Assembly (NCBI GenBank): GCA_002269645.1
Contig: NIVC01001685.1
Coordinates: 124,001-188,000, forward strand
Origin: Macrostomum lignano
Lineage: Eukaryota
Direction: 5' to 3'
Length of the DNA: 64,000 bases
Shown here: in pieces, positions 1,681 to 23,579 of the stretch
How the letters are laid out: every line of letters starts with the position of its first letter
Position numbering within the stretch: the first letter of the stretch is position 1
Made by a program: the position numbers and the translations under genes
The notes under the pieces: generated by a model
What the model was told of the DNA's origin: nothing
Database searches by the model: none
What the model saw: only the letters and a program-made list of their open reading frames with translations

Positions 1681-2233
<553 letters not shown>

Positions 2234-3287: not shown

Positions 3288-3735
3288 ATTTGCCATGCAG
3301 ATTCTTTGCTGTCTACTCTTTGAACTCGCCGCCGTTTCATCCGAAAGCGCCGGCGTGGCTGGGGTGGAACAAAGACTCGTCAAAGACTGCTGTACAAAGA
3401 CCCAGCTGCAATCCGCAACGCCCTGAGCTGTACAATGTCGGGCAGTGCTTAAGCCACAGCAGCAGCAATAGCAACAACCGGATCTGCTTCTGCGTGAATG
3501 CAGAGTCTGGCAGATTGGTTTCTGGCACAGAGACCCAGCCGGCAGTCTTTGTTAATCTTTCCTGCCAGCCCCTCAGTTTCCGGTTGATTCTCGGATTTCG
3601 CGATCAGTGGCAACCGGCTCTAGCCGACCCGAGCGGTCCGGAGTTCGAATCCTTGGCGGAGCGAATGGAACGAGAGATAGACGCGATTTTCTATCAGTAT
3701 GCCGGCAATCAGACGGCCAAGGTTTTGGCGTTTCG
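3288..3735 (+). CDS. Internal coding exon: thyroglobulin type-1 domain plus N-terminal half of a SEA domain (extracellular protein)
   Basis: Acceptor TTTCCAG (AG 3286-3287, phase 1) and donor CG|GTGAGC (GT 3736-3737, phase 2). Translation xLPC...RPSCNPQRPELYNVGQC...RICFCVNAESGRLVSGTET...NLSC has the six-Cys TY pattern (PxC, QC, CxCV..G..xGT, terminal C). It is followed by FRLILGFRDQWQPALADPSGPEFESLAERMEREIDAIF...VLAFR, a typical SEA start. Two N-glycosylation sequons (NLS, NQT). Confidence 0.85.
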
Positions 3736-3774
3736 GTGAGCTTGAGGGGAGTTTTCCTGTTTCATTCTTCATCA

Positions 3775-4035
3775 TTCGGCTTCACAGAATCTTTTCCATC
3801 AGGCATCACAGAATCTTCTCCATCAGGCATCACAGAATCTTCTCCATCAGGCATCACAGAATCTTCCCCATCAGGCATCACAGAATTCTCTCAATCAGGC
3901 ATGACAGAATCTTCTCCATCAGGCATCACAGAATCTTCCCCATCAGGCATCACAGAATCCTCTTCATCAGGCATCACAGAATCCCATCAAGTGTCACAGA
4001 ATCTTCTCCATTTGACGTCACAGAATCCCTGCATC
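3775..4035. repeat. 24-bp minisatellite (CATCAGGCATCACAGAATCTTCTC)n, intronic
   Basis: About 10 degenerate units starting ~40 bp after the donor at 3736. Confidence 0.9.
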
Positions 4036-4764
4036 AGGCCCTTAATAGTCTCCTCTTACCCGACTTCAAAACGATCCCCGACCGAGCCGCAAAACCTCCG
4101 CATTCAAAGCCATTAATGGCTGTCAGTCTCCCAAGTGAAAGTTTCTCAGAGAGATCTAATTTTCAGTAAATCCAGTACGCCATCCGAAATGCGATCTGTG
4201 AAAGTCTCCGCTATGCGCCCCAGCCTCCCGCAGTGCAAATCCTGTCTGCCCGCTGATAACAACCAGACCGAACTTGACTCTCCCCTATTCTGTAAAACGA
4301 TTTGCATATTATGCATATTGATAGAGGAGCTTTAAAGGGAAGAAGAGATTTAAGCTTTTAGCTCTAAACTACTCCAGCATCTCCAACTACATGCAACTGT
4401 TTGCATTGATTTGTGTTTGTGCTCCCACTTGGTTCACTGGTCTTGGAACTCTTAATGAGCTGTCCTCCCATCTCTACAGCCGCTCCCCAGAGAGTGGCAA
4501 TGGGAGTAGGAAGAAAAAGGGGAATTTGCCAGCTTCACCAGCGGACACCGCCCCCATCCGACCTCCTTCTGAGTGTCCCCTGGCACCTCATTTGCCCAGG
4601 ATTTTCCCACATTTCTGTTTAAAAAACCCTCCCAAAATAAACGGCACAGCAACGGGAAGAGTCAAATTAGCAATCTATTCATTCCGACCAAGCGGTTGTC
4701 GCTGCTTGACTGCACTTTTTATAGCCTAGGTTGTCGCATTTAAAGGCCAAGTACAAGATTACTC

Positions 4765-5465
4765 ATTGGCGCCTTACTTCCTCATTGGCACACCCTTCCT
4801 CATTTGCGCCCCACTTCCTCATTGGCGCCCCCTTCCTCATTGGCGCCCTACTTCCTAAGTGGTGCCCTCACTTCTTAATTGGCGCCTCACTTCTTAATTG
4901 GCGCCTTACTTCTTAATTGGCGCCTCAGTTCTTAATTGGCGCCTCACTTCTTAATTGGCACCTCACTTCTTAATTGGCGTCTCAGTTCTTAATTGGCGCC
5001 TCACTTCTTAATTGGCGCCTCACTTCTTAATTGGCGCCTCACTTCTTAATTGGCGCCTTACTTCTAAATTGGCGCCTTACTTCTTAATTGGCGCCTCACT
5101 TCTTAATTGGCACCTCACTTCTTAATTGGCACCTCACTTCTTAATTGGCGCCTCACTTCTTAATTGGCGCCTCACTTCTTAATTGGCGCCTCACTTCTTA
5201 ATTGGCGCCTCACTTCTTAATTGGCGCCTTACTTCTTAATTGGCGCCTTACTTCTTAATTGGCGCCTCACTTCTTAATTGGCGCCTGACTTCTTAATTGG
5301 CGCCTCACTTCTTCATTTACGCCTCCACATCCTCGTTGGAGCCCCCACATCCTCATTGGCGCCCCCACATCCTCATTGGCGCCCCCACATCCTCATTGGC
5401 GCCCCCACATCCTCATTGGCGCCCCTACATCCTCATTGGCGCCCCCACATCCTCATTGGAGCCCC
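4765..5465. repeat. Compound minisatellite: degenerate 20-bp units, then 19-bp (CTCACTTCTTAATTGGCGC)n, then 20-bp (CCCCACATCCTCATTGGCGC)n
   Basis: Direct reading. All variants share TTGGCGC. Confidence 0.93.
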
Positions 5466-6149
5466 ACGCACGCAGAAGCACAATAAATTATGCAGTTTTC
5501 CAGCAGCTAACATCGGCTTGCAGAACCAAGCAAGATCCTCAGACCGACGCATCCGTTATAAATCTGGCTTATTTTTCATAACAGCCCAGATACATGCTCC
5601 CACAGTATCTCGGGTGTCTCGGGCCTTTCTTGGCTCACCCCTGTTGCACACTCGGCAGCAATTAGCGACAGGGGAACCCCTGGACTGGATTCGCGGACAA
5701 CCTGCTATTATGATTTCCCAATTGGGTGGAACAGGTTAGAAAGTCCAAAAGGAAGGCTGGAGGAGAGACAGCGAAGGGAACTAACGGGGGGCGGCACTCG
5801 GAAAGACAAGGAGAAACTGGAGCCTGATTTGCAACTGCAGTGAGAGTTTGTTACTCCGTCATTCCGTCTTCTTCGTCTGCTGCAGCTGTCTTTCTTAGAG
5901 TCTGCAGCTCAAGTGCAAACAGCTGGAGACTGGACCGGAACTTGTGATGAATGCGGCTCTCTCCCTCCTTTGTTTTTTGAACTCGAGAGAACATGGATGC
6001 AGATGCTGAAGAGAAGGTATGTAATGAGATATTGGAGGAGCGAGAGAAAATAACATGTCCTAGAGAGTTGAATTATAAATTAAGAGGCAGAGAGAGGTGA
6101 TCAGGGAGAATGAGAGAATGGCGTGGATGACTGGGATGAGGGATAAAAA

Positions 6150-6520
<371 letters not shown>

Positions 6521-7401
6521 AGCACCCCTAACGCTTGAAGCATAAATTTTCTGGGCCTATCGGATATGAGAAAAACAGTTTTTTCGGTAAAACAAAATTT
6601 ACCAAATGTCTCATAAATCTTCCTTCTTAGTATAATTAGCCAGTCTAAAATAAGGATATTTGAAAATCTCCATAACTTGTTTTATTGTTTTTTATGACTA
6701 ATAAAAAGCTTTATGTGTCGACGTTTATTACACTTGTTTAAGAGTGCGCTTGTCTCCAAGACCTGTTACTGTGTTCTAACCCTAACCTTATTGAATAAAC
6801 TAGAGGCCCTAACAACCAAATTAGTGCCCTGACAACTAAGCAGCGTCTTTAGCAACCAAAGTAGCGCCCCTAGCAACCAAATTAGCGGCCATTAAACACA
6901 AAACATTCAGGGCCCTTTTTAACCTTCAGTGAACATAAGACGCACAAAAAATCAATTCGATTTTTACCTGTTTCATTACTGTAGATAACCTAAATGGTAT
7001 TGCAATAGAAATACATTACGGTGAGGCAGGTAGCCAGCGGTCTATGCTGCAATCCCATGGTAACTAAAATGCGTCTCTCTGACTCTATAAAATATGAACA
7101 AAGATTGCTTTAATAAAACAGCACTCAAGCGATACTCAGAAATGCGATCGATATTGACCCAGCAGCCATTAAACAAGGGAGAGCCAGCTTCCGAGATGAA
7201 GGATTGAATTCGTCCGTTTGAATTTTGGTATTGGACTGAAATACACAGGGTATTACATGCATGGTTATGAAATTTGATCTCTTTTTAGGTAAGGGGAAGA
7301 CTGCCGCACTAAATGTATGAGCTGCATTTGGGGTTCAGGAGTCTTCAGTCAGTGTACTTGTAACCTGCAGTTTGAGGTACCTGAAGTAAATGCCATTATG
7401 A

Positions 7402-7803
7402 TCTTGAATACTCCCTGAAGGTTCATGAGGGTCCTGAATACTCACTGAAGGTTCATGAGGGTGCTGAATACTCACTGAAGGTTCATGAGGGTCCTGAATA
7501 CTCACTGAAGGTTCATGAGGGTGCTGAATACTCACTGAAGGTTCATGAGGGTGCTGAATACTCACGGAAGGTTCATGAGGGTGCTGAATACTCACTGAAG
7601 GTTCATCAGGGTGCTGAAAACTCACTGAAGGTTCATGACAGGGTCCTGAATACTCACTGAAGGTTCATGAGGGTGCTGAATACTCACTGAAGGTTCATGA
7701 GGGTGCTGAATACTCACTGAAGGTTCATCAGGGTGCTGAAAACTCACTGAAGGTTCATGACAGGGTCCTGAATACTCACTGAACGTTCCTGAGAGTCCTG
7801 AAG
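7402..7803. repeat. 30-bp minisatellite (GGGTGCTGAATACTCACTGAAGGTTCATGA)n
   Basis: About 13 units, with GGGTG/GGGTC alternation and one internal ~122-bp block duplication. Confidence 0.93.
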
Positions 7804-8199
7804 CATGTCATATGCATGTCAGAATTATCATAGTAAAACACATGGGCTAGAAATATTAATAAAATTAGCTGCCTCTTTTACCTATATTCCCCTTTTAACT
7901 CCAACTATCTGATTAGACCTTTCTAAAAAGTACACAAGACCAATTTGAAGTGAACCAGAGGGCATTCTAGGTTACTAGCTAGGGCTCGTAACTTGAGCAG
8001 ATCGGGTCTTAATTGCTTACACCTCTGCTTTTTTTAAAGTCCCCAGTTGGTATTTGCACGCGATGTTGAAATTGCGGATTCCTGACTGGGCTGCTAGGGG
8101 CGGGGGGGGGGGCGGGGGCGGGTTCTGGGCTTAGGCATTTAGTTTAGCTATCTGGCAAGTATATGATTCCCCTGGCACTGGCTTCCACTCCCTGGTTCT

Positions 8200-8870
8200 C
8201 TCCTACTCTACCCATCTCCCTCTCTCCCCCTCTCTCTCTCTCTTCCCCTATCTGTCTCCCTCCCACTCCCTCTCTCTCCCTCTCTCTCTTCCCCTATCTG
8301 TCTCCCTCCCACTCCCTCTCTCTCCCTCTCTCTCTTCCCCTATCTGTCTCCCTCCCACTCCCTCTCTCTCCCTCTCTCTCTTCCCCTATCTGTCTCCCTC
8401 CCACTCCCTCTCTCTCCCTCTCTCTCTTCCCCTATCTGTCTCCCTCCCACTCCCTCTCTCTCCCTCTCTCTCTTCCCCTATCTGTCTCCCTCCCACTCCC
8501 TCTCTCTCTCCCTCTCTCTCTTCCCCTATCTGTCTCCCTCCCACTCTCTCTCTCTCCCTCTCTCTCTTCCCCTATCTGTCTCCCTCCCACTCCCTCTCTC
8601 TCTCCCTCTCTCTCTTCCCCTATCTGTCTCCCTCCCACTCCCTCTCTCTCTCTCTCTCTTCCCCTATCTGTCTCCCTCCCACTCCCTCTCTCTCTATCCC
8701 TCTATCCTTCTTTTTCCCCTCTCTTCTTTTTTCCCCCTCTCTCTCTCTCTCTCTCTCTTTTTCCCTCTCTCCCTTTCTCCCTCTCTCTCCCTCTCTCCCT
8801 CTCTCCCTATCTCTCTCTTTCCCCAATCTGTCTCCCTCCCACTCTACCCTCTCTCTCCCTCTCCCGCTCC
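8200..8870. repeat. Pyrimidine-rich array with a ~46-48-bp unit (core TTCCCCTATCTGTCTCCCTCCCACTC)
   Basis: TATC marker recurs at 8295, 8341 and 8387 (46-bp period). Confidence 0.88.
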
Positions 8871-9420
8871 GTTTCCTACGGTACCTCTTACTCCAAATAC
8901 CTCTCTTTTGTCAGCTCCCTCTCCTACTCTCGCCTTCCTTACTCCTTCATTTATTCCTCTCATACCCCTTATCAAATCTCCCTCTCACCTCTAACCTATA
9001 TCCTATTCACACCTGCATCCCATGATTTTCATCTGTAATCCATTGCAGCTGTCACTAAATATCTGTTTTCTCAGCTCGTCTCTATACGTGGACTACCACA
9101 GCAATACTAAACCTGTTCACTTCTTATAGTAAGAGAGCAGGTCAATTTTCAAGTCTTCAATGGGTTTTCCAATCATTTAGAAATTTTCAGCAATTTCGAA
9201 ACTGCGCAACGAAAACCTGTTGCGTTGTTTTAATTTCTATGAGAATCAAATAAATTAACCAGAGAAGGTCCAAGCATACAGTCGAAAAACTCCGCAATAT
9301 AAATCCTGCACTAGTAAAATATTTGTTATAGTTAGTTAAACCACTTTCTGCGTAATCGAAGTTCAAATTCTCTAAGCTATCAGCCCTGCATTTTGCATGG
9401 CCGCGGCCAGGGTTTTTCAT

Positions 9421-10338
9421 CAGAGGGGCGATATTTCATCTGAGAGGGCGCCAGTTCATCTGAGGGGCGATATTTCATCTGAGAGGGCGCCAGTTCATCT
9501 GAGAGGGCGATATTTCATCTGAGGAGGCGCCAGTTCATCTGAGGGGGCGCCAGTTCATCTGAGGGGGCGATATTTCATCTGAGAGGGCGCCAGTTCATCT
9601 GAGGGCGATATTTCATCCGAGAGGGCGCCAGTTCATTTGAGGGGCGCCAGTTCATCTGAGGGGGCGATATTTGATCTGAGGGGGCGCCAGTTCATCTGAG
9701 GGGCGATATTTGATCTGAGGAGGCGCCAGTTCATCTGAGGGGGCGATATTTGATCTGAGGAGGCGCCACTTCATCTGAGGGGGCGCCAGTTCATCTCAGG
9801 GGGCGATATTTCATCTGAGAGGGCGCCAGTTCATCTGAGGGGCGATATTTCATCTGAGGAGGCGCCAGTTCATCTGAGGGGGCGATATTTCATCTGAGGG
9901 GGCGCCAGTTCATCTGAGGAGGCGATATTTCATCTGAGAGGGCGCCAGTTCATCTGAGGGGCGATATTTCATCTGAGGAGGCGCCAGTTCATCTGAGGGG
10001 GCGATATTTCATCTGAGAGGGCGCCAGTTCATCTGAGGGGCGATATTTCATCTGAGGAGGCGCCAGTTCATCTGAGAGGGCGCCAGTTCATCTGAGGGGC
10101 GATATTTCATCTGAGAGGGCGCCAGTTCATTTGAGGGGGCGCCAGTTCATCTGAGGGGGCGATATTTCATCTGAGGGGGCGCCATTTAATCCGAGGGAGC
10201 GTCACTTTCATTTGAGGGGACGCCATTTCATTAGAGGGCGCGCCATTTCATCTGAGAGCGCGCCAGATTCATCCGAGGGGGCGCCATTTCATCTGAGAGC
10301 GCGCCAGATTCATCCGAAGGGGCGCCATTTCATCTGAG
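9421..10338. repeat. 19-21-bp minisatellite with two interleaved unit types (GGGGCGCCAGTTCATCTGAG / GGGGCGATATTTCATCTGAG)
   Basis: Direct reading. Mostly alternating units give a ~40-bp dimer. Confidence 0.93.
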
Positions 10339-11039
10339 AAAAAGGGAGAAAAGGAGAGAGAGGGAGAGAAGAGGAGAACACAGCAACCGATAGAGAACAC
10401 AAAGACAAGCAGGGAGTAAATTTTTAGACTGGATGCAGATGATGGAGAAAAGAGTAGGAGAAAGGTGGAATACACTGAGACAGGCAAATAGACCACAGAG
10501 GTTAAAAGGTGCAGACTTGAACAGAAAGAGGGTCGGACAGGACATATCGGAAGCGCTGAAGTTCGATAGAGACTGCCCCAGGCAGGCAGTAGCTGGCACG
10601 GATTAGATAAAGGAACCCAAACTGCATCGTCAGTGGATGCAGAGGTATGTTAGCAACCACAAATCCCAATTGACCAACAATCGAAAAAAGGATTTCCTGT
10701 CCCCCTCTAGGCTTACTTTGTCATGCTAAGTCAGTGCTTCAGCTGTACTGCAGTTTTAGTTATCGTTTACTGAGATTAGGGAGTTTGGGAAAAATCTCCC
10801 AGTCAGAGCCGCGGGGATAAGGAAGTTAATCCTAGCGATAATTGACTTTGTCCCTGAGTGTGCGGCTGGGCTGGGGTCAGCTTTGACAGTTGAAACTCAT
10901 CATCAAGCTGGCTTGCGTGTCGGAATGAAGTTAGAATTTAGGAACTGACTTTTAGTGACAGCTGGAATGGAGTGCGGATGGACAGGTGGCATGCAGGCGT
11001 GTGTAGGGAATGGGTTGGGGTGAGAGGGAGGATAAGGAG

Positions 11040-11430
11040 TTTGAGAAGAGAGAGTGAGAGAGGGGAGGTAGAGGGAAAGAGGGAGGAAAGATAGAAGGGA
11101 GAGAGAGGGTGAGAGGGAAAAAAAGGAGAGAGAGGGAGAGATGGAGAGAGGGAGAGAGGGAGAGAGAGGGAGAGAGAGGGAGAGAGAGGGAGAAGAGGGA
11201 GAGAGAGGGAGAGAGAGGGAGGTAGAGGGAAAGAGGGAGGAAAGATAGAAGGGAGAGAGAGGGTGAGAGGGAAATAAAGGAGAGAGAGGGAGAGAGGGAG
11301 AGAGGGAGAGAGGGAGAGAGGGAGAGAGGGAGAGAGGGAGAGAGGGAGAGAGGGAGAGAGAGGGAGAGAGAGGGAGAGAAGGAGAGAGAGGGAGAGAGAG
11401 GGAGAGAGAGGGAGAAAGGAAGAGAGAAGA
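11040..11430. repeat. GA/GGA-rich low-complexity array
   Basis: Direct reading. Confidence 0.9.
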
Positions 11431-12007
11431 AAGATGCGGAAATGAATGGAGGAGCACTAACAGAGTACGAGCTCGAACAAACACACTTATTTAGTGCGAA
11501 AAAAGCTGAATAAAAGCTTCCCCTAGACTCCCAATGCACTGAACAGTGCAGTTGAGAAGCACGCACCTGTACATCGAAAGTTAAAAAGCAGAAAGACCTG
11601 ACATCTCCAACTGTGGGCCACTGCGCTTTTGTCCTCTGGACATCTGTCTGACTATCGGAATTGTGACTTCTTCTCCTAGGACAAAAGTTTACCACAGGCT
11701 GTGCATTGGCCACCACCACCCTGAAAGCGAAGATCGAGAGAAAATGAAAAAAAACTTTTCGATTTTATTTTTATACTGGCTTTAGCCGTTCCACGCCCAC
11801 GGTCTTGACAGGAAGGATTCTAAGGCTGTGGTGCGTGTGTTCTCTGACACGCAATGTGTGTGTGGCCTGCATGGTGTGTGGTAAGATAGATTTTCAACCA
11901 CTTATATAGCGATATGATTTTTGACCACTTGGATGACCGATCCTCTGCATATAAAGTATTTCAGTTCAATTTGCTGCGATAGTGAGGTTTCTGCGACAGA
12001 TTTTCCG

Positions 12008-13698
12008 CTCTCTACTCTCCACTCTCTGCTCTCTACTCTCTACTCTCTGCTCTCTACTCTCTGCTCTCTACTCTCTACTCTCTGCTCTCTACTCTCTGCT
12101 CTCTGCTCTCTACTCTCTGCTCTCTACTCTCTGCTCTCTACTCTCTGCTCTCTACTCTCTACTCTCTGCTCTCTACTCTCTGCTCTCTGCTCTCTACTCT
12201 CTGCTCTCTACTCTCTACTCTCTGCTCTCTACTCTCTGCTCTCTGCTCTCTACTCTCTGCTCTCTACTCTCTACTCTCTACTCTCTACTCTCCACTCTCT
12301 GCTCTCTACTCTCTGCTCTCTGCTCTCTACTCTCTGCTCTCTACTCTCTGCTCTCTACTCTCTGCTCTCTACTCTCCACTCTCTGCTCTCTACTCTCTGC
12401 TCTCTACTCTCTGCTCTCTACTCTCTGCTCTCTACTCTCTGCTCTCTACTCTCCACTCTCTGCTCTCTACTCTCTGCTCTCTGCTCTCTACTCTCTGCTC
12501 TCTACTCTCTGCTCTCTACTCTCTGCTCTCTACTCTCTGCTCTCCACTCTCTACTCTCCACTCTCTGCTCTCTACTCTCTGCTCTCTACTCTCTGCTCTC
12601 TACTCTCTGCTCTCTACTCTCTGCTCTCTACTCTCTGCTCTCTACTCTCTGCTCTCTACTCTCTGCTCTCTACTCTCTGCTCTCTACTCTCTGCTCTCTA
12701 CTCTCTGCTCTCCACTCTCTACTCTCCACTCTCTGCTCTCTACTCTCTGCTCTCTACTCTCTGCTCTCTACTCTCCACTCTCTGCTCTCCACTCTCTGCT
12801 CTCTACTCTCTGCTCTCTACTCTCCACTCTCTGCTCTCTACTCTCTGCTCTCTACTCTCCACTCTCTGCTCTCTACTCTCTGCTCTCTACTCTCTGCTCT
12901 CCACTCTCTATTCTCTACTCTCTGCTCTCTGCTCTCTACTCTCTGCTCTCCACTCTCTACTCTCTGCTCTCTACTCTCTGCTCTCTACTCTCCACTCTCT
13001 GCTCTCTACTCTCTGCTCTCTACTCTCTGCTCTCTACTCTCTGCTCTCTACTCTCTACTCTCTACTCTCCACTCTCTACTCTCTGCTCTCCACTCTCTGC
13101 TCTCTGCTCTCTACTCTCCACTCTCTACTCTCTGCTCTCCACTCTCTGCTCTCTACTCTCTGCTCTCCACTCTCTACTCTCTACTCTCCACTCTCTACTC
13201 TCTAGTCTCTGCTCTCCACTCTCTGCTCTCCACTCTCTGCTCTCTACTCTCTGCTCTCTACTCTCTGCTCTCCACTCTCTACTCTCTGCTCTCTACTCTC
13301 CACTCTCTACTCTCTAGTCTCTGCTCTCCACTCTCTACTCTCCACTCTCTACTCTCTAGTCTCTGCTCTCTACTCTCTGCTCTCTACTTTCTGCTCTCTA
13401 CTCTCTGCTCTCCACTCTCTACTTTCTGCTCTCTACTCTCTGCTCTCTACTCTCTGCTCTCCACTCTCTGCTCTCTACTCTCTGCTCTCTACTCTCTGCT
13501 CTCTACTCTCCACTCTCTACTCTCTGCTCTCTACTCTCTGCTCTCCACTCTCCACTCTCTGCTCTCTACTCTCTGCTCTCTACTCTCTACTCTCTGCTCT
13601 CTACTCTCTGCTCTCTACTCTCTGCTCTCTACTCTCTGCTCTCTACTCTCTGCTCTCTACTCTCTGCTCTCTACTCTCTGCTCTCTACTCTGCTCTCT
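12008..13698. repeat. 7-bp microsatellite (CTCTCTA/CTCTCTG/CTCTCCA)n
   Basis: Direct reading. The 627-aa and 407-aa ORFs are its stop-free frames. Confidence 0.96.
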
Positions 13699-14159
13699 AT
13701 ATTCTTCAGTAGCAATATTTTTTCAATCATATTTAAGAAAAGTTTTAATTTTACACTCTCAGCCTGTTCCCAGTCCTCATTACCAGCAGTACCTGCACAG
13801 CTGAGACAGCACAGGTTAATGCATGCAGCCAGCATAATTTCAATTGCCACACAAACTCTGCTCTGAGCTGCACACGGAAGTTTGCCTTTTGTCCGATCTT
13901 TTCTGTCCGCCAGTAGCAGCATGAAAAAAGGCTGCACTTTTCTCAGGCAGTTTGTTCTGCTTTGTAAACCACTTTTTCACTGATAAAATCGCATTTAGTG
14001 CTTTGAGGAGACTTCAATGTTTGCACTGCAGTTCAAGGAGCTTTTTTCATTTAGATTTATAGTGTCATGCCTGAAACTGGCTACTTATCAGTAGGCGATT
14101 GGTAGAAAATCGCTGAATATAAAATTTTGCATTTCAAAATAAAATGTTAGCAAATAATT

Positions 14160-14485
14160 GCCAGCTTCAGGGGCGCCATCCTTTGTAGGGGCGCCACTTT
14201 CATCTGAGAGGGCGCCAGCTTCATCTGAGGGGGCGCCATTTCATTTGAAGGGGACGCCAGTTTTATCTGAGGGGCGCCAGTTTTATCTGAGGGGGCGCCA
14301 GTTTTATTTGAGGGGGCGCCAGTTTCATCCGAGGGGGCACCATTTCATCTGAGGGGGCGCCAGTTTTATCTGAGGGGACGCCAGTTTTATCTGAGGGGGC
14401 GCCAGTTTTATCTGAGGGGACGCTAGTTTTATCTGAGGGGACGCCAGTTTCATCTGAGGGGGCGCCATTTAACCTGAGGCGCCAG
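14160..14485. repeat. ~21-bp minisatellite (GGGGGCGCCAGTTTTATCTGA)n, same family as 9421-10338
   Basis: Shares GGGGCGCCA..TTT/TTCATCTGAG with the 9421 array. Confidence 0.9.
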
Positions 14486-14555
14486 CCTGTCAGCCTGTAG
14501 AATTAGTCCGTAGAACTTCAACTCTGCGCATTCCTCATCCAACCTGGACCCTCAG

Positions 14556-14778
14556 ACGGGGCTCAATACTGGCCGAGCTGCTCGTCACATCTGTCGGTCA
14601 TCCGAAGCAGCTGGTTGGCGATGCCCAGAGCTTCAAGAGTCTGCTGGACAGGCGAGTCCAGTCGACTACCGGCAAGCTGGCAGGAATGACGCTGAACCCG
14701 CTGCTCTACGAACTTCAGCCAGTTGAAGCTGAGGGCGGCCGTAACCCTGGCAACCACGGATCAAGAGGAGGTCAACTA
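14556..14778 (+). CDS. Coding exon: C-terminal half of the SEA domain plus a Gly-rich linker (absent from the ORF track)
   Basis: Acceptor AG at 14554-14555. Phase-2 translation: RGSILAELLVTSVGHPKQLVGDAQSFKSLLDRRVQSTTGKLAGMTLNPLLYELQPVEAEGGRNPGNHGSRGGQL. The GS-hydrophobic strand and G.L.G.TL.P tail are SEA-like. Ends at donor CTA|GTGAGC (phase 0), or reads through to TGA at 14785-14787. Confidence 0.78.
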
Positions 14779-14837
14779 GTGAGCTGAATTTGTTTTTTAC
14801 TTTCGAGTTTTTATGTCTACCTTTAATTGTGTGTTCT

Positions 14838-15282
14838 GTGTCTGGCTGATGCAATTGTGTGTGTCTGGCTGATGCAATTGTGTGTGTCTGGCTGATGCAA
14901 TTGTGTGTGTCTGGCTGATGCAATTGTGTGTGTTTGGCTGATGCAATTGTGTGTGTCTGGCTGTGTGTCTGGCTGATGGAATTGTGTGTGTCTGGCTGTG
15001 TGTCTGGCTGATGGAATTGTGTGTGTCTGGCTGATGCAATTGTGTGTGTTTGGCTGATGCAATTGTGTGTGTCTGGCTGTGTGTCTGGCTGATGCAATTG
15101 TGTGTGTTTGGCTGATGCAATTGTGTGTGTCTGGCTGTGTGTCTGGCTGATGGAATTGTGTGTGTCTGGCTGATGCAATTGTGTGTGTCTGGCTGATGGA
15201 ATTGTGTGTGTCTGGCTGATGCAATTGTGTGTGTCTGGCTGATGCAATTGTGTGTGTCTGGCTGATGTAATTGTGTGTCTGG
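14838..15282. repeat. 23-bp minisatellite (GTCTGGCTGATGCAATTGTGTGT)n with 12-bp truncated units
   Basis: Direct reading. Confidence 0.92.
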
Positions 15283-15365
15283 GCTGTAAAATATAGACCT
15301 TTCTATAATAGTGAAATAAGCAATCGCACTACTCAGTTTACTAGTTCCACCAGTGAACGAGCCGA

Positions 15366-15477
15366 GCCCGGCGCCGCCGAAGGCGGCGTCGGGCGAGAGC
15401 GAGAGAACCCGAGGCCCCGCCAGGGGCCGAGGGCGAGTGAATAATTTCAACCCATGGCGGCCGAAGGCCGACATGGG
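15366..15477. other. Cluster of three GC-rich mini-hairpins, two with GAA loops; probably part of a non-autonomous mobile element
   Basis: GCCCGGCGCCGCC-GAA-GGCGGCGTCGGGC (15366-15394); GGCCCC-GCCA-GGGGCC (15413-15428); CCCATGGCGGCC-GAA-GGCCGACATGGG (15451-15477). Confidence 0.6.
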
Positions 15478-17627
15478 CTAGAAAGTATTTACGAGTAAAT
15501 AAGTTAGACTCTAATGCATTTTGAAATTTCACGTTTTTCCGCCAAAAAATGCTCCTGTTTTGCAACCACTGCACAGATTGAGTTGAGTGAGGTGTCAATC
15601 GATAGAAAACTTTTAGATCTATCGAATTAATGTACTTTTAAATGCAGAGATTTTTTTAATGAGCCGTAAATTAACTGGAAAGACGATTTTTTCAAAAGTG
15701 CTTCTAGGAGATCTCAAAATTCTGGTACACCTTACGAGATACGGCTTCGACATCTGAGGATCAAAGTTGTCAAACTAAATTTCCTACAAAATGGTATATG
15801 GCACTTTAATTTATTTCGGCGTCTTTATGCAGTTTTGGTGGGTTTTTTGGGTAAAAAAATGACCTTCATTTTATTATTTCGCCAATTTTTCCTACGAAGC
15901 TTTTTGAGTTTGAGCTTCAAAGCAGTGCAGTTGGATGCGCAATGCAAAAATCTACAAGTGTCTAAAGTTTTGTTTCCCTACGATTCTGCAGTGCTGAGAA
16001 AATCGACAAAAATCGATTTTTCAAAAAATCACATGACTTTCGCATTATTGCTCATTATAATTATGAGAACATGGTGCGAATAAGCCGATTTCGAATTTCT
16101 ATAGCATAGTTGCTGTACTATATTGGTTTAAATTGCCGCCGTCTGATTTCGCTGCTTTCGGGTTGAAAAATCGATCAGAAATCGATAATTTGTGATTTTT
16201 GGCTGATTGGGTGCCAGAAAAATGGGTGATTAAAATTTTAAAAGAATGCTAGATCAAATGCGGATACTGCAACGAGTTTTACTAATGTCTGGCTAAAATT
16301 GACCAAGTTTTTGAGTGTCTGCAACAAGTGCTCATGTGTCAAAAGTGATTGGAAATCGATCAGAGTAGTGATTTTTTAATATTTTGCTTGAAATCAGGCA
16401 AAAAAACGCAATAAGACGGCATTATTTTTATGACGGCTGATTTCCCACATAACGAGGCATATTTGTGTGCAATTTCTAGAGATTCGGTTTATTGAGTAAA
16501 AAATTATCGATAAAAAACTGAAAACTTGACTTTTTACTTTTATGTTAGTTCCGGGGCTATTTAAACTGGAAATGGTAGGCATTTCGCACTGAAACCAATG
16601 CACAGTGTTCCATATAGTTAATTTAACAAATTTCTTGAATTTCATAACCATTCGATGTTTTTTCATGTAAAAAATGCCTTTTTTGCATCGAAATTCATCA
16701 CATTAAGCTGCATACCGCTTTGCATAATCTGCATTTGCATGTGATTGCTTGCATGGCTTTGGCATTGGGCTGAGTTAAGCTGGTTAGAAAGGAAGGAAAA
16801 GAAAGGAAAGGAAGGAATAATCGTACATACAATGTACACACCCGTCCCTTCCAAGTGGGGTTGTGGCAACGCGAGAGGGCTTGGCGGCTTGGTTTGGAGG
16901 GCGTGTAATAGAGCTTCATTTGACTCGCACACAGACCAAGGGAAATTAGATCGATAAACGGGCGTCACGTGATTAGAATTTCGTATTAAATTTAGCTCTT
17001 TAACTGCACATTTGAATTGCAAGCCCAGTACAAAGTTTGGCGGGTGGCAAGCTCCAAGTCACTACGTGTACAATCCACCCAGACTAAAAGGTCAGGCGAT
17101 ACGACTTTTGAAGCAGCTATGTACAGTGTTTTGGAATGACTTTATTTCTACTATAGCTTTCTTTGCAACCCCGTATCTTATGTCAGTTTAGTGTACTATC
17201 TGATTGATAGTATCAGTCAGTATGAGTATTAGGTCCCACAAAACTGGCCTGGCTTTCCAAGCACTTAAGCTGATGCTAGAGGATCTTGCGCCGAAACAAC
17301 CAGCTTAAATGGAGTTGTATAACCCTGCTACGCTCTAGAGACTTTAGACAATTTTTTAGATCGAGGGCCTATTGTAGAAGATTCCAGTTCATGGTTGCGG
17401 CCTTGCGGGCCAGATAAGAGAGGAAATGAAAGAGAATAGATGGAGAAGAGAAAAGAGGAGATAAAGATAAGGCAAGGCGAGAGAAAAGCGAGAGGAGAGG
17501 GGAGACTAGAGAGGAGAGATTAGAGAGGAGAAAAACAGAACAGACAAAGAGAAAAATGGGATAAGTAGAGATTTAAATTTTTCTTGAGATTCTCAGTTCT
17601 TTTTTATCGGTACAAAACTAGGTTTAT

Positions 17628-17706
17628 CAAGTAGTATGAAGACCCACGTCTAAAAAGAAGCCCGTTCACTGGTGGCAAAAAGACGTGTGCGTCTTCATAC
17701 TACTTG
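17628..17706. repeat. Short inverted repeat / hairpin (MITE-like)
   Basis: 16-bp perfect arms CAAGTAGTATGAAGAC ... GTCTTCATACTACTTG, extended after a bulge by CACGTCT/AGACGTG, around a ~30-nt loop. Confidence 0.7.
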
Positions 17707-18055
17707 TAATAGAAAGAAACAATTTTAGCACAGTTGATTAGAATGATAGAGAAATAAAACAAACTATAAAACTATATACATAATAAAACTATGCATAACC
17801 ACACAACTGGAATAATTCAGAAGATTGATCAACAAAATTAACTGTGACGTTTAAAACAAATGTCAATAAAGAGAGAGAATCAAAAGTAATCCATTTCAGA
17901 CAAAGGAGGCCAGGATCTTTACAGTTCCACTGTAATCTCATTATAGATTTTACGATAAGTATTCGCTCTTTAGTCGACAGGGTGTTTAAAAGTATTTCAG
18001 AATTTTTTTTCTCTATTTATTGATAATAAATAAAAAGTAATGTTGGGATTTACAA

Positions 18056-18418
18056 AGGGGGGCCCGTAGCCCAGCGGTAGCGCAGCTGCTCTGGTGTGCC
18101 AGCGGCCCAGGCTCGATTCCAAGTGCAGTCACATTAATTTGGGGCTGAATTGGAATTTCGGCTTGGCTCGCTTGTGCAATTAACGGCCTTGAGAGCCAAC
18201 CCCCCAAGGCGCAGTGAAGTGTACATGCCAAACAATTGATAAAGTTAGGGCCGCTGTACACTCCTGTGTGAGTGTGTGCCTGCGTACGTATCCGCGCGCT
18301 TGTGTGCCTGCTCAGGGGAGTCGGCGGAATGGGCAGTAATGCCTCTCGCCGGTTGTGTGCCTATGTCGCTTAAAGTGCGCCAGGGTGCACACAACCCCCC
18401 TGCCTCTAATAAAATAAA
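18056..18418 (+). mobile_element. Full-length tRNA-derived SINE (~360 bp) with target-site duplication
   Basis: Pol III A box TAGCCCAGCGG (18067-18077) and B-box-like GGCTCGATTCC (18110-18120) at tRNA spacing; degenerate cloverleaf; A-rich tail TAATAAAATAAA; flanking direct repeats TGGGATTTACAA (18044-18055) and TGGGATTTCCAA (18419-18430), 11/12 identical. Confidence 0.8.
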
Positions 18419-18657
18419 TGGGATTTCCAAGTAAAAAAACGGATTATATATAGATTTCACCTTTAATCCAGGAGGCGACATGGAGATTAACTTTTGTTTG
18501 ATTCTAAGAGAATTATTGCTGATAAAACCTCGTTAAAAATTTCCACAAGCCAATCGAATAAATACATGTACAAGTAGATAAATAAAGATGTGGATATAAT
18601 GATGTCATTTTCTAGTTCACTGCACGTCTATTCATATAACAATCTAAACGCATACTG

Positions 18658-18663
18658 TTTATT
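18658..18663 (-). promoter_or_regulatory. Putative poly(A) signal AATAAA of the PAN-lectin gene
   Basis: TTTATT on the + strand, ~135 nt downstream of the terminal TAG, in an AT-rich 3' region. Confidence 0.45.
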
Positions 18664-18796
18664 CATTAGGACTACGCCGTTTGCCTGGTATGTAAAAATA
18701 ACTTCTTATTTTATAATTATTCATAATGACTTTGCATGCATTGAAGTGATAAGCTCTTGATTAAAAGTCCGCGTTGCTGCTCGGTTGTCTCTCACG

Positions 18797-19639
18797 CTAG
18801 CGAGTCGTGAAGAACTCAAACGGAACTACGCACTCGCAGGCTCCAAAGAACCGCCTTGAGCCTTGATAGTCTCTCAGGCTAGAACCAGAAATCCTGGCTC
18901 GAATATCCAAGCTGCTTCCATCGTTTGGCTCCCCAGACCGCCAAAGGCCGCCATTGTAGATGTTCAGCAGCGGTAGCGGCCAGCCGCAGTCCGCCCACGC
19001 CCAGCTGCCGTTGCTCAGAATCGATGCGCTCACCCAGATGTCGCCAGAGAGTCCAACTGACGCTTTTAGGTCTTGCAGCTCCTCGATGCTGCTGAGATCG
19101 GCCAGCTTCGTCAGCGGCATGGCAGACCCGTCAGAGCTGCTCAAGAAGCTCCTGCAGCTGCCGGCCTGAGCACTCCAGCTGGCCTCCTGCCCGCTTCCAG
19201 CAGCCTTGTACAGCGAGCCCTTGAATCGACTGCCGCTGACGCCGGACACTCAGCGATAGTCGGCGGGACAGAGCCGGCCCGGCTCGAGACCCTTCGACTG
19301 CCTGACGAAGACTCGGAGCTGCCGGCTGGCGCAGCCACTGCTCGCCATCGAGCTGGCATCGAGCAGCAGCTGCGAGCTGCAGGCATCGAAGGAGAACAGC
19401 AGGCAGACCTGAGCGTCCGAGGCCTGTCCGGCCTCCATGGCGAAGGCCCGGCAACGCGGAGCTGCCCGACAGCGAAATGCGCAGCTGGCGATGTCCAGGT
19501 CGAGCCGCTGGTAGTGGGCTGGCGACACGCAGTTGGAGGTGAGGATCGCGTGGAAGGAGGTGAGCTGTCTGCAGCAGTTGGCCGGATGGCAGAGCAGCAG
19601 CAGAGGCAACAGCAGAAGAGCGATGGCGCGTGAGAGCAT
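18797..19639 (-). pseudogene. Intronless secreted PAN/Apple + C-type lectin gene with one in-frame TGA (19250-19252): recent pseudogene, null allele, sequence error or readthrough
   Basis: ORFs 19250..19639 and 18797..19249 are contiguous in one frame (281 codons). Signal peptide MLSRAIALLLLPLLLLCHPANC; PAN pattern C-x3-C-x5-C...VCLLF; lectin motifs CP-x-x-Y, SW...SC, IWVS, WAWAD, WRSGEPND, FFGACE. Confidence 0.75.
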
Positions 19640-20094
19640 CTGACTGGATAGAGGATTTGAGAATACAACTGTAACCTACTGCCAGAAGTGATGAAGATTT
19701 GCCAAGAGCAGATGCAAAAAAATTCCTCCTGCCGTCTGATTTATGGAAGACGCTTTGCTGCTTTGATGCAGCAGTTAGCAAGTATGATAGCAATACGAGG
19801 CTGATTGGCATTGCTGGGTTTACCCGGCCTGGGGCAGAGTTTTTCTACAGACGTGTAAGTGTTGAACTTGAACTCCCATCAGAGAGAACAATGGACAGCT
19901 GTGAGAATTCTGCAGGTGTTACTGACAGCTGACTTTCACTGGTTCGGAAGCGTCATGCAGTTTCTTTTCTTAAAGCATGTGCCTAGTACTCAACCTGAAC
20001 GTAAAGGCGCTCACTTTTGCGATAAACTTTGTGACCTGGAGCTCAGTCAGTCGCTAAGGGAAGCCGACTGCAAAAACGCGCGTGGCTAACTCGA

Positions 20095-20472
20095 TTGAAT
20101 CGCAATGCATTCGAAGGCCAACCGAAGGTCGATGCCGACCATCTGCTCGACCAGTTGGTAGGAGAGATGAGGTCGCGGTTGAATAGTGCGATCGAAAGCC
20201 ATATTGCCAGGTTGGGAGCTGCAAGCGGTCAGACAGAGTCTCGGTTACCGGATTCTGTTTACTCATCAGGGATTTTTCCAGACCGTCAGAATCTCATTAC
20301 GTACGATAAAGCGGTTGTACGAGCGGATAGGTTCAGGATTGCCGATTTTTATTTCGAGAGCGAACCACTTTCGTCCGGCTTGCCGGCAAGTGGGAGCGAC
20401 CACGGCGTACCTTTCGGCGAGTCATGCAAATGGTTCGCAATTCCCTATACCAGGATCTCTCTTCGACGTTAA
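20095..20472 (+). other. Unassigned non-repetitive 125-aa ORF, possibly a decayed transposase or exon fragment
   Basis: Protein-like composition (..DHLLDQLVGEMRSRLNSAIESHIARL..) but no family recognised with confidence. Confidence 0.2.
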
Positions 20473-22069: not shown

Positions 22070-22083
22070 TGTGTCTGTCTGTC

Positions 22084-22162
<79 letters not shown>

Positions 22163-22165
22163 GAG

Positions 22166-22246
<81 letters not shown>

Positions 22247-22269
22247 GAGTGTCTGTCGGTCTGTCTGAG

Positions 22270-22345
<76 letters not shown>

Positions 22346-22352
22346 GGTCTGT
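22070..22352. repeat. (TCTG)n microsatellite (GACA family, opposite orientation to 1681-2233)
   Basis: Direct reading, with CTGAGTGT interruptions. Confidence 0.96.
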
Positions 22353-22971
22353 CCATCTTTTAACTCTTCCCTGACCTGTTTACACATGGGATTAGCCCGT
22401 GGAAGCCACACAAACACAACCCATCACTCAACATTCGGCTACTTTTCCTAGAAAATCAGCAGCTCCTCAACCCAGCTGTCTGTAGCAGCGGCAGCAGCGA
22501 GCCACTCGCTGCATCAAACAGCCGCACTACATCGCTACAATCACGCCAGGTGTTGCTAGTCAATCAGCGAGCCCCTTCCAGTTCCTCAATTTCTGCTTCT
22601 AAAATCTGCCTCATTCTTTATCTCGCTTCACAACTCCCCAGCTGCCCAAACAGCAAAATTAACTTCTATTTCTTCCTATTTTTCAGCATTGGATTTTTAC
22701 CTTCTTTTTCGTAGACAAAAGTTTTTTGCTCGTTGATACGTAGGGGCAGTGCCCTTTTATTACTGTTAGGCTATGAATGCAAATGTATGAAGTCTTGCCG
22801 GGCAGCAATGTACGTGTTTAAAGAATAAGCAAAGCAAACAAGAACTACAGATATGCGAATTTACCATCCGAATGGGGAGCCTAAATGTTCTGAAAGTTAA
22901 ATATGCTGAGGATTGATTTGCACGTAAAATTTTTTAAAAGATTTTAATACGAGTTAAGATTTAGATGGAGA

Positions 22972-23295: not shown

Positions 23296-23579
23296 TGGAA
23301 ATACGGAGAGGTCACGCAGAACGCATTAGTATAGTCATATAGATAGACCGGCATGCACTATTTTGGAGAGCTGTTAGCAACAGAAGATTACTTAGGGGAG
23401 AAGCTAATTATCACTTACTGTTTTTGGCTAATTTATGACTGTTATACCCTTTTGTATGGCTCTACAATTGTGTCATAAATTGAACTGCATGCGCGTATGC
23501 ATCTCTGTTCCATCCTAGCGGGTGAACTATAGTCTAACAGGTTGCGAGTAAAAGAAAAACTCTTTGAAGTTATAGACAA

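What the first reader, a model, noticed from the sequence alone, without database searches (positions are those of the whole stretch)
3288..14778. Invertebrate-type gene with a thyroglobulin-1 domain directly followed by a canonical SEA domain: an EpCAM/TROP2-like ectodomain
Seen: exon 3288-3735 encodes a full six-Cys TY domain followed at once by a SEA N-half. Exon 14556-14778 completes the SEA in the correct phase, giving VLAF-R|R-GSILAEL. Established: TY followed by a SEA-fold domain is the ectodomain plan of vertebrate EpCAM/TROP2, whose SEA-like domain is divergent, whereas mucin-type SEA domains such as MUC1 (FRPG^SVVV) autocleave at G^S. Inference: this protein combines the EpCAM-type order with a mucin-type FxxGS motif, so it may be an invertebrate relative or ancestral form of the EpCAM family, or an independent TY-SEA fusion. 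The second exon is not in the ORF track, so automated annotation could miss or split the gene.
Basis: partly seen in the sequence, partly recalled or inferred. Interest (0 to 1): 0.78.

Follow-up and report, generated by a model that had tools for sequence, protein, structure and literature searches.

The report
Flatworm syndecan with TY and SEA domains
The two exons are real and do encode a thyroglobulin-type-1 domain followed by a canonical, probably self-cleaving SEA domain, but they are exons 3 and 4 of an already annotated Macrostomum lignano gene whose membrane anchor and tail make it a syndecan, not an EpCAM relative.

Summary
Exons 3288-3735 and 14556-14778 have good GT-AG sites and join in phase (CG|A = Arg) to give ...VLAF-R-RGSILAEL.

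The window is Macrostomum lignano contig NIVC01001685.1:124001-188000. Both exons, with exactly these borders, are exons 3 and 4 of the six-exon GenBank model BOX15_Mlig001759g1 (PAA65095.1, 445 aa). That model was built from RNA-seq, so annotation did not miss the gene.

The TY domain has six Cys and scores just above the Pfam cut-off. The SEA domain is canonical:
- It scores 56 bits against a profile of 30 foreign SEA repeats.
- The AlphaFold model has pLDDT 82.
- The best Foldseek matches are the SEA domains of TMPRSS6, MUC16 and HAT.
- A GSILA motif sits in the beta2-beta3 turn.

The exons outside the window encode a signal peptide, Ser-Gly glycosaminoglycan-type sites, a transmembrane helix and a syndecan tail (RIRKADEGSY...EFYA; Pfam Syndecan 61.5 bits).

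Liver-fluke "syndecan" orthologues share the TY domain. Bivalve syndecans carry two TY domains. SEA-bearing syndecans are published for echinoderms.

No EpCAM-specific feature was found. I class it as a new architectural variant of a known family, of moderate interest.

The parts
3288..3735 (+). Exon 3 (448 nt) of M. lignano gene BOX15_Mlig001759g1. It encodes residues 129-278 (part): the TY domain plus the N-terminal half of the SEA domain.
   Evidence: The splice sites were read. It is identical to the GenBank model. It is 448/448 identical in the paralogue g2, while the flanking intron is 92.7% identical.
3296..3565 (+). Coding region of the thyroglobulin type-1 domain, Cys132 to Cys221 (six Cys).
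   Evidence: Pfam TY scores 21.4-22.3 bits against a cut-off of 20.6. The best PDB sequence hit is the IGFBP-2 TY domain. The TY alignment A4 has invariant P, C, QC, C.CV, G and GT columns. Its profile hits thyroglobulin, saxiphilin, IGFBPs, p41, TROP2 and EpCAM.
3566..3735 (+). SEA domain, N-terminal half (beta1, alpha1, beta2), ending ...KVLAFR.
   Evidence: Pfam SEA, alignments A2 and A3 and the AF2 model.
3736..14555 (+). Intron 3 (10.8 kb, phase 2), filled with mini- and microsatellites.
   Evidence: It is 88-95% identical, with many indels, to the same intron of the paralogue.
14556..14778 (+). Exon 4 (223 nt), encoding residues 278 (part) to 352: the C-terminal half of the SEA domain (beta3, alpha2, beta4) and the start of the stalk.
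   Evidence: Pfam SEA coverage extends to model position 103 only when this exon is joined.
14560..14565 (+). Codons GGC TCA for Gly280-Ser281, the predicted SEA autoproteolysis site (G|SILA).
   Evidence: G and S are nearly invariant columns of the SEA alignment. They lie in the beta2-beta3 turn of the model. [quoted passage not shown] Cleavage itself is inferred.
14779..64000 (+). First 49 kb of intron 4, which is 71.5 kb in the contig. Exons 5 (28 nt) and 6 (TM plus syndecan tail) lie 22-23 kb beyond the window end. Exons 1-2 lie 1.2-2.0 kb before its start.
   Evidence: No N- or C-terminal peptide of the protein is encoded in the window. The exons were located in the contig.
23581..64000 (+). 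24-bp satellite (AGAGATGAGACACGGGAGAGTTAC) inside intron 4, about 61.5 kb in the contig. It is not part of the protein but explains the size of the gene.
   Evidence: The paralogue has only about 1.5 kb of it.

Best explanation
The two exons are exons 3 and 4 of the Macrostomum lignano syndecan gene. This is GenBank PAA65095.1 (UniProt A0A267EU77), with six exons over 89 kb on contig NIVC01001685.1. It has a near-identical second copy, g2.

The encoded type I membrane protein, in order:
- signal peptide;
- acidic Ser-Gly region (GSGSGSG, DDEDL...ASGD);
- six-Cys TY domain (132-221);
- canonical SEA domain (about 223-332);
- short stalk with a second SGSG;
- transmembrane helix containing GxxxG;
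- syndecan cytoplasmic domain (C1 RIRKADEGSY, V region, C2 EFYA).

Shown here: the exon structure, the domain identities, the motifs, and stronger conservation of exons than introns between the two copies.

Inferred mechanism:
- It acts as a cell-surface (heparan-sulfate-type) proteoglycan co-receptor.
- Its tail binds PDZ and cytoskeletal partners, as in other syndecans.
- The juxtamembrane SEA domain cleaves itself at Gly280|Ser281 during folding. The chain carrying the glycosaminoglycans and the TY domain would then stay non-covalently docked on the membrane stub and could be released by force or unfolding. That would be a built-in version of the protease-driven ectodomain shedding of vertebrate syndecans.
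- The TY module adds a protein-binding or cysteine-protease-inhibitor-type surface.
For: Identity of the gene:
- The window equals L001 11960-75959 at 100% identity.
- The 445-aa protein is 100% identical to the joined peptide. It is named in GenBank and UniProt.
- It was rebuilt exactly from six GT-AG exons.
- The GenBank annotation of this assembly derives from an RNA-seq genome-guided transcriptome (PMC5730564).

Syndecan membership:
- Pfam PF01034 scores 61.5 bits, E = 7.5e-17, against a cut-off of 25.2.
- All other hits to the full protein are syndecans, matched through the TM and tail region.
- The C1 and C2 (EFYA) regions are what define the family (PMC1464127; PMC8061687).

Orthologues:
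- Clonorchis sinensis 'syndecan' GAA51344.1 and the Opisthorchis proteins have SP, TY, about 140 aa, TM and EFYA.
- They share RPxCxxxRPEL..QC..CFCVN..G...GT with the M. lignano protein.

Other syndecans with folded modules:
- Bivalve TY-TY-syndecans from Mercenaria and Ruditapes.
- Published SEA-syndecans in echinoderms (PMC4336488; PMC10381214).

SEA domain.

Selection: exons show 4 mismatches in 1338 nt between g1 and g2 (exon 3: 0 in 448). Introns are 88-97% identical with many indels.
Against: - Pfam SEA is 0.6 bit under its cut-off. The TY hit is marginal and was not listed when the full-length protein was scanned.
- The SEA model was built on an alignment dominated by canonical SEA repeats, so it leans towards that fold.
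- The fluke orthologue has GGL instead of GSI at the aligned spot, and its region shows no SEA profile signal (-0.8 bits; hhalign 5%). Self-cleavage is therefore not a conserved feature of flatworm syndecans.
- Intron positions differ between M. lignano and Clonorchis.
- Glycosaminoglycan attachment, cleavage and PDZ binding are all untested.
- I saw no raw junction reads. RNA support comes only through the published annotation method.
Confidence: 0.85

Rival explanations
1. This is an invertebrate relative or ancestral form of EpCAM/TROP2. On this view the TY-SEA-TM order reflects common descent with the vertebrate EpCAM ectodomain.
For: - The order of modules is the same: TY, then at once an alpha/beta SEA-fold domain, then a TM helix.
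- The EpCAM C-domain is regarded as a divergent SEA (PMC7349879).
- The TY profile aligns with the EpCAM TY core (hhalign 94%).
Against: - The tail is syndecan, not EpCAM.
- There is no Cys-rich N-domain.
- The SEA profile against the EpCAM ectodomain gives probability 0.5%.
- BLASTP of the TY-SEA peptide against EpCAM gives E = 0.38, covering the generic TY core only.
- EpCAM and TROP2 are not in the top 50 Foldseek hits, while TMPRSS6, MUC16 and HAT SEA domains lead.
- EpCAM is the weakest TY hit in the PDB.
- No EpCAM-specific Pfam family appears at E <= 1.
Confidence: 0.04
2. The 445-aa model is a chimera. On this view a secreted TY-SEA gene (exons 1-4) and a separate small syndecan gene (exons 5-6) were joined by the transcript assembler across a 71.5-kb, satellite-filled gap.
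For: - Intron 4 is about 50 times the species' mean intron length of 1.1-1.4 kb.
- Reading through the exon 4 donor meets a stop after two codons (..GGQL-VS*), so a soluble product is conceivable.
- I saw no junction reads myself.
Against: - The second copy, g2, has the same six exons with intron 4 of only 10.9 kb.
- Liver-fluke orthologues encode SP, TY, TM and EFYA in one ORF. One is a 2008-nt contig from SRA run SRR1049094 with no introns, which is probably cDNA.
- Exons 5-6 alone would have no start codon or signal peptide.
- The exon phases fit.
Confidence: 0.05
3. The exons are a decaying or non-functional copy in a repeat-ridden region, and the domain matches are relics.
For: - The surroundings are overwhelmingly satellite DNA.
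- The Pfam scores are marginal.
- The genome is partly duplicated, so one copy could be redundant.
Against: - The ORF is intact over six exons with consensus splice sites.
- Exons are 99.1-100% identical between copies, against 88-97% for introns.
- All six TY Cys residues and the SEA core residues are kept.
- The model comes from expressed transcripts.
Confidence: 0.03

Closest known systems
Flatworm syndecans of liver flukes: Clonorchis sinensis 'syndecan' GAA51344.1 / G7YEG1, Opisthorchis viverrini XP_009167809.1, O. felineus TGZ65706.1
   Same: - They have a signal peptide, one six-Cys TY domain with the shared RPxCxxxRPEL..QC..CFCVN..G...GT pattern, and a structured-looking region of about 140 aa.
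- They then have a stalk, a TM helix and a C1-V-C2 tail ending REFYA.
- Overall E = 1e-15 over 63% of the protein.
   Different: - The flukes have no Ser-Gly/acidic region before the TY domain.
- The region after the TY domain is not recognisable as SEA and reads GGLIYY where M. lignano has GSILAE.
- Intron positions differ: in Clonorchis the TY domain and the following region each have their own exon.
Bivalve TY-TY-syndecans: Mercenaria mercenaria LOC123540918, Ruditapes philippinarum LOC132746843
   Same: - They have N-terminal acidic Ser-Gly sites and TY domain(s) in the ectodomain.
- They have a syndecan TM and tail: 50% identity over the last 62 residues, Pfam PF00086 + PF01034.
   Different: They carry two TY domains and no SEA domain. 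An acidic disordered stalk sits where the SEA would be.
Echinoderm SEA-containing syndecans: Ophiocoma wendtii contig 358; holothurians Eupentacta fraudatrix and Apostichopus japonicus
   Same: A SEA domain lies in the ectodomain of a protein with a conserved syndecan C-terminus (PMC4336488; PMC10381214).
   Different: No TY domain is reported. I could not compare the sequences, so homology of the two SEA insertions is untested.
Canonical self-cleaving SEA domains: MUC1, MUC16, TMPRSS6, TMPRSS11D/HAT, ADGRF1
   Same: - The fold is beta-alpha-beta-beta-alpha-beta.
- The FR.G-S-[IV]-[IVL] motif sits in the beta2-beta3 turn.
- Foldseek TM-scores are 0.63-0.74 and profile hits range from E = 1e-11 to 3e-5.
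   Different: The host proteins are mucins, type II proteases or adhesion GPCRs. None has a syndecan tail or an adjacent TY domain.
Vertebrate EpCAM / TROP2
   Same: The order is TY, then a SEA-fold domain, then a single TM helix. The SEA-fold strand starts a few residues after the last TY Cys.
   Different: - EpCAM has a Cys-rich N-domain and no glycosaminoglycan region.
- Its C-domain is divergent and lacks GS-phi-phi-phi.
- Its tail is unrelated.
- No sequence or fold signal beyond the generic TY core was found.

Membership tests
Syndecan | Profile match to the syndecan TM + cytoplasmic domain (Pfam PF01034) above the curated cut-off | tested here: met
   61.5 bits, E = 7.5e-17, cut-off 25.2, residues 383-443. 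This part is encoded by exon 6, outside the window.
Syndecan | Conserved cytoplasmic C1 region (R-[MI]-[KR]-K-x-DEGSY) and C2 region EFYA at the C-terminus | tested here: met
   RIRKADEGSY at 411-420 and EFYA at 442-445. The criteria come from PMC1464127 and PMC8061687.
Syndecan | Type I topology: signal peptide, single TM helix, short tail | tested here: met
   By inspection of the sequence: MKALQISLLLVAIQIQLTGYG..., ILGAIVGGGIGALALIILLIVFCVY, and a 36-aa tail. No dedicated predictor was run.
Syndecan | Ser-Gly glycosaminoglycan attachment sites in the ectodomain, actually substituted | not testable with these tools
   The motifs are present: GSGSGSG at 36-42 next to DDEDL, ASGD at 57, SGSGG at 375-378. 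Substitution needs biochemistry.
SEA domain (PF01390) | Profile match above the curated cut-off | tested here: inconclusive
   25.8 bits against 26.4 on the joined peptide, and 24.1 bits on the full protein. However, a leave-one-out profile of 30 SEA repeats gives 56.3 bits, against a maximum of 9.8 for 2000 shuffles.
SEA domain (PF01390) | Alpha/beta sandwich fold, beta-alpha-beta-beta-alpha-beta | tested here: met
   The AF2 model has pLDDT 81.9 and pTM 0.74. The top Foldseek hits are the TMPRSS6, MUC16 and HAT SEA domains. Caveat: the alignment behind the model is made of SEA repeats.
SEA domain (PF01390), self-cleaving subclass | G|S-phi-phi-phi motif in the beta2-beta3 turn, and actual autoproteolysis | tested here: inconclusive
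   The GSILA motif is present at 280-284, in the turn between strands 53-61 and 66-73 of the model. Cleavage itself cannot be tested here.
Thyroglobulin type-1 domain (PF00086) | Six Cys with the QC...C[WF]CV...G....GT signature, and a profile match above the cut-off | tested here: met
   21.4-22.3 bits against 20.6 on exon-level peptides. The invariant columns are listed. The hit was not listed in the full-length scan.
EpCAM / TROP2 | Small Cys-rich N-domain preceding the TY domain | tested here: not met
   There is no Cys between the signal peptide and Cys132. The region is Ser/Pro/Gly-rich.
EpCAM / TROP2 | EpCAM-type C-domain (divergent SEA without the GS motif) | tested here: not met
   hhalign of the SEA profile against the EpCAM ectodomain gives probability 0.5%. 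EpCAM and TROP2 are absent from the top 50 Foldseek hits. The GS motif is present here.
EpCAM / TROP2 | EpCAM-type TM and cytoplasmic tail | tested here: not met
   The tail is syndecan. The EpCAM sequence used for comparison was checked against PDB 6i07/4mzv.

The most novel reading that the evidence does not exclude
Folded modules (TY, SEA) may belong to the ancestral syndecan ectodomain. TY is found in flatworm and bivalve syndecans. SEA is found in a flatworm and in echinoderm syndecans. Ecdysozoans and vertebrates would then have lost them, leaving the 'disordered' ectodomain now taken as typical. In the strongest form of this reading, the juxtamembrane TY-SEA-TM cassette of EpCAM/TROP2 descends from such a syndecan-like proteoglycan.
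Probability: 0.1. Interest if true: 0.6.

Novelty: new variant of a known kind. Interest (0 to 1): 0.38.

Why it matters
Syndecan ectodomains are described as fast-evolving and recognisable only by glycosaminoglycan sites. The family is identified by its tail (PMC1464127, PMC8061687).

A syndecan that carries a TY domain and a canonical SEA domain with an intact self-cleavage motif shows that the ectodomain can hold folded, functional modules. With the fluke, clam and echinoderm cases, three phyla now show this.

It also suggests a testable alternative to metalloprotease shedding: a pre-cleaved, force-releasable ectodomain.

M. lignano is transgenic- and RNAi-tractable, so this can be tested. 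For genome annotation the finding is reassuring rather than alarming: the RNA-based model is correct despite introns of 10.8 kb and 71.5 kb.

Tried and rejected
- **Word-indexed homologue search.** The search with the joined peptide found nothing. The exhaustive HMMER search was needed.
- **Single-sequence AlphaFold2.** The TY-SEA model was useless (pLDDT 38), so TY/SEA packing could not be compared with EpCAM.
- **Combined TY and SEA alignment.** A MAFFT alignment mixing TY and SEA fragments (A2) misplaced the TY fragments and the fluke row. It was not used for modelling. Its SEA rows, which aligned well, are cited as SEA evidence. Only the SEA domain was modelled (A3).
- **Alternative start codon.** An ATG at 3295 opens a signal-peptide-like reading (MQILCCLLFELAAVSS...) in another frame that stops at 3421-3423. 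I rejected it because the transcript-based model uses the acceptor at 3287/3288 and that frame carries all six TY Cys.
- **Rfam.** A scan of 1-24000 found nothing.
- **SRA run numbers.** Looking them up in papers found nothing. The organisms were identified through cluster members instead.
- **SEA in the fluke orthologue.** There is no profile signal.
- **Shared intron positions with Clonorchis.** They are not shared.
- **Other open frames in 1-24000.** Pfam scans gave only a weak PAN hit.
- **Literature on flatworm syndecans.** The search returned nothing relevant. Pei & Grishin 2017 is not held.

Full report

Yes. Translating the given ranges in frame 1 gives stops. The frame that starts at 3200+3k reads ...DLPCRFFAVYSLNSPPFHPKAPAWLGWNKDSSKTAVQRPSCNPQRPELYNVGQCLSHSSSNSNNRICFCVNAESGRLVSGTETQPAVFVNLSCQPLSFRLILGFRDQWQPALADPSGPEFESLAERMEREIDAIFYQYAGNQTAKVLAFR. 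The frame 14482+3k reads RRGSILAELLVTSVGHPKQLVGDAQSFKSLLDRRVQSTTGKLAGMTLNPLLYELQPVEAEGGRNPGNHGSRGGQL.

The DNA shows these splice sites:
- acceptor tttccag|A at 3287/3288;
- donor CG|GTGAGC at 3735/3736;
- acceptor ccctcag|A at 14555/14556;
- donor CTA|GTGAGC at 14778/14779.

The phases fit.

Pfam finds Thyroglobulin_1 at 21.4-22.3 bits (cut-off 20.6). It finds SEA at 25.8 bits (E = 1.2e-5, cut-off 26.4) on the joined peptide. The SEA match covers model positions 11-103 of 106 and crosses the junction. Exon 3 alone gives only 17.6 bits over positions 11-43. The join therefore completes a domain, which chance would not do.

**2. Where the window comes from, and the whole gene**

An exhaustive HMMER search of 1.84 billion representative proteins returned one protein of 445 aa that is 100% identical to all 218 joined residues.

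- It is PAA65095.1, BOX15_Mlig001759g1, from Macrostomum lignano.
- UniProt lists it as A0A267EU77, 'Thyroglobulin type-1 domain-containing protein'.
- It has a sister copy, g2 (PAA80286.1), that differs by one residue.

The window is contig NIVC01001685.1:124001-188000 of assembly GCA_002269645.1, at 100% identity.

I rebuilt the protein exactly from six GT-AG exons:

| Exon | Position | Length | Encodes |
|---|---|---|---|
| 1 | 2.0 kb upstream of the window | 105 nt | signal peptide |
| 2 | 1.2-1.4 kb upstream of the window | 280 nt | Ser/Pro/Gly-rich region with GSGSGSG and DDEDL...ASGD |
| 3 | window 3288-3735 | 448 nt | TY domain and N-half of SEA |
| 4 | window 14556-14778 | 223 nt | C-half of SEA and start of the stalk |
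| 5 | about 22 kb past the window end | 28 nt | stalk |
| 6 | about 23 kb past the window end | 254 nt | stalk, TM helix and tail |

None of the N- or C-terminal parts is encoded in the window.

The GenBank annotation of this assembly was derived from an RNA-seq-based, genome-guided transcriptome (StringTie, TACO and mapped de novo transcripts; PMC5730564). The 3735^14556 junction therefore already rests on transcript data, and the fear that annotation would miss the gene is unfounded.

Intron 4 is 71.5 kb, because about 61.5 kb of a 24-bp satellite sits in it. In copy g2 the same intron is 10.9 kb, with about 1.5 kb of satellite.

**3. What the protein is**

The C-terminus matches Pfam Syndecan (PF01034) at 61.5 bits, E = 7.5e-17, against a cut-off of 25.2. 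It shows the two motifs by which syndecans are recognised across animals: C1 (RIRKADEGSY) and C2 (EFYA) (PMC1464127; PMC8061687).

All other database hits to the full protein are syndecans of insects, fishes and others. They match through the TM and tail region.

The best non-self hit is P0023 (26% identity over 63% of the protein). It belongs to a 90% cluster with Clonorchis sinensis 'syndecan' GAA51344.1 and the Opisthorchis viverrini and O. felineus proteins. These are trematodes, at the other end of Rhabditophora from Macrostomorpha.

These fluke proteins have a signal peptide, one TY domain, a region of about 140 aa, a stalk, a TM helix and the syndecan tail. Their TY domain shares a very specific pattern with M. 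lignano: RPxCxxxRPEL..QC..CFCVN..G...GT. The finding is therefore the flatworm syndecan.

Venerid clams (Mercenaria, Ruditapes) have syndecans with acidic Ser-Gly sites and two TY domains. SEA domains in syndecans have been published for a brittle star and for holothurians and sea stars (PMC4336488; PMC10381214). I found no paper describing a TY domain in a syndecan.

**4. The SEA domain**

The M. lignano sequence aligns over its whole length with mucin-type SEA repeats. L23, S28, F60, G63 and S64 are nearly invariant columns.

- A profile of the 30 foreign repeats alone scores the M. lignano sequence at 56.3 bits. The best of 2000 shuffles scores 9.8.
- These repeats were picked because they matched the query. 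They are nevertheless bona fide SEA: the A3 profile, which also contains the M. lignano row, hits the SEA domains of ADGRF1, TMPRSS11D, MUC16, MUC1 and agrin in the PDB.
- AlphaFold2 on this alignment gives pLDDT 81.9 and pTM 0.74, with a beta-alpha-beta-beta-alpha-beta order. Gly-Ser sits in the turn between strands 2 and 3.
- Foldseek against the PDB puts the SEA domains of TMPRSS6, MUC16 (four entries) and HAT on top, with TM-scores of 0.63-0.74. No EpCAM or TROP2 chain appears in the first 50.
- GSILA fits the GS-phi-phi-phi self-cleavage motif (PMC7349879).

The fluke orthologue reads GGLIYY at the aligned place, has large insertions, and gives no SEA signal. Self-cleavage, if real, is not general among flatworm syndecans.

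**5. The TY domain**

The domain has six Cys (132, 169, 182, 195, 197, 221). By single-sequence search the closest solved structure is the IGFBP-2 TY domain.

A profile of the syndecan TY domains (alignment A4) finds all TY proteins in the PDB:
- thyroglobulin and saxiphilin;
- IGFBP-2 at 40 bits;
- p41 at 36 bits;
- TROP2 at 36 bits;
- EpCAM last, at 27 bits.

There is no special affinity to EpCAM.

**6. The EpCAM idea**

- BLASTP of the TY-SEA peptide against it gives E = 0.38, for the TY core only.
- The SEA profile against it gives probability 0.5%.

Together with the syndecan tail and the missing N-domain, three defining EpCAM features were tested and not met. What remains is a shared order of modules (TY, SEA fold, TM). 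That is a resemblance, not membership.

**7. Is the gene functional?**

Between copies g1 and g2 the exons differ at 4 of 1338 positions, and exon 3 at 0 of 448. The introns are 88-97% identical and full of indels. At the 92.7% identity of the intron stretch next to exon 3, about 30 changes would be expected in that exon. The coding sequence is therefore under constraint.

**8. Mechanism**

Shown:
- the architecture;
- the motifs;
- the sequence constraint.

Inferred:
- a glycosaminoglycan-bearing co-receptor with a PDZ-binding tail, as for other syndecans;
- SEA autoproteolysis at G280|S281, giving a two-chain, non-covalently held ectodomain that can be released mechanically;
- a binding or protease-inhibitor role for the TY domain, by analogy with p41, saxiphilin and the IGFBPs.

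**9. Rivals**

- A chimeric gene model is made unlikely by copy g2 and by the one-ORF fluke transcripts.
- A pseudogene is made unlikely by the exon-versus-intron contrast.
- EpCAM kinship is made unlikely by the tests above.

**10. Verdict**

The object is an already annotated gene that is best described as a syndecan with an unusual TY-SEA ectodomain, a new variant of a known family. Interest is moderate.

Noticed in passing
window 23581-64000 (continues to about L001 97000): A 24-bp satellite (AGAGATGAGACACGGGAGAGTTAC) with about 95% matches between adjacent copies and strong strand bias (GC skew +0.48, AT skew +0.49). It fills about 61.5 kb of intron 4. The paralogous copy of the gene (L008) has only about 1.5 kb of it, so the array is a recent expansion or an assembly difference.
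   Followed up: partly
window 18800-19675, minus strand: An unannotated open frame with a signal-peptide-like start (MLSRAIALLLLPLLLLC). It has a weak PAN/apple match (E = 0.02) and a weak C-type-lectin match (DC-SIGNR, E = 0.016, with an EPN motif). One in-frame stop at 19250-19252 interrupts it. It lies inside intron 4 of the syndecan gene and could be a nested gene with a short intron or a pseudogene.
   Followed up: partly
window 2629-3168, 4765-5443, 9415-10338, 14188-14479: Four minisatellite arrays of 19-21-bp units share a GGCGCCA core in either orientation. They are scattered through the introns on both sides of the exons, which suggests one repeat family seeded several arrays.
   Followed up: no
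window 3295-3423, + strand, frame of 3295: An ATG inside exon 3, in another frame, opens a 42-codon reading that looks like a signal peptide (MQILCCLLFELAAVSSESAG...). I judge it a chance overlap, because the transcript-based model does not use it.
   Followed up: yes
window 14779-14787: If the exon 4 donor is not used, the frame ends after two more codons (..GGQL-VS-stop). Intron retention or early polyadenylation would give a soluble TY-SEA proteoglycan without the membrane anchor.
   Followed up: no
L001 91576-92480 (outside the window, inside the satellite): A 216-aa gene call in the contig lies entirely within the 24-bp satellite. It is probably a spurious ORF of the repeat.
   Followed up: no
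window 20035-20469, + strand: A 145-aa open frame of ordinary composition with no Pfam match. Its nature is unknown.
   Followed up: partly
window 1680-2232 and 22072-22353: Long (GACA)n and (TGTC)n microsatellites in opposite orientation. The window start 5-789 is a 14-bp CT-rich minisatellite, and 12007-13699 holds another 14-bp array of 121 copies.
   Followed up: no
L009 (Clonorchis sinensis CM030371.1:21698240-21723335): In the fluke syndecan gene the TY domain and the following region of about 140 aa each occupy their own exon. In M. lignano the TY domain and half of the SEA domain share an exon and an intron splits the SEA just before the Gly-Ser. Intron positions have therefore shifted within flatworms.
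   Followed up: partly
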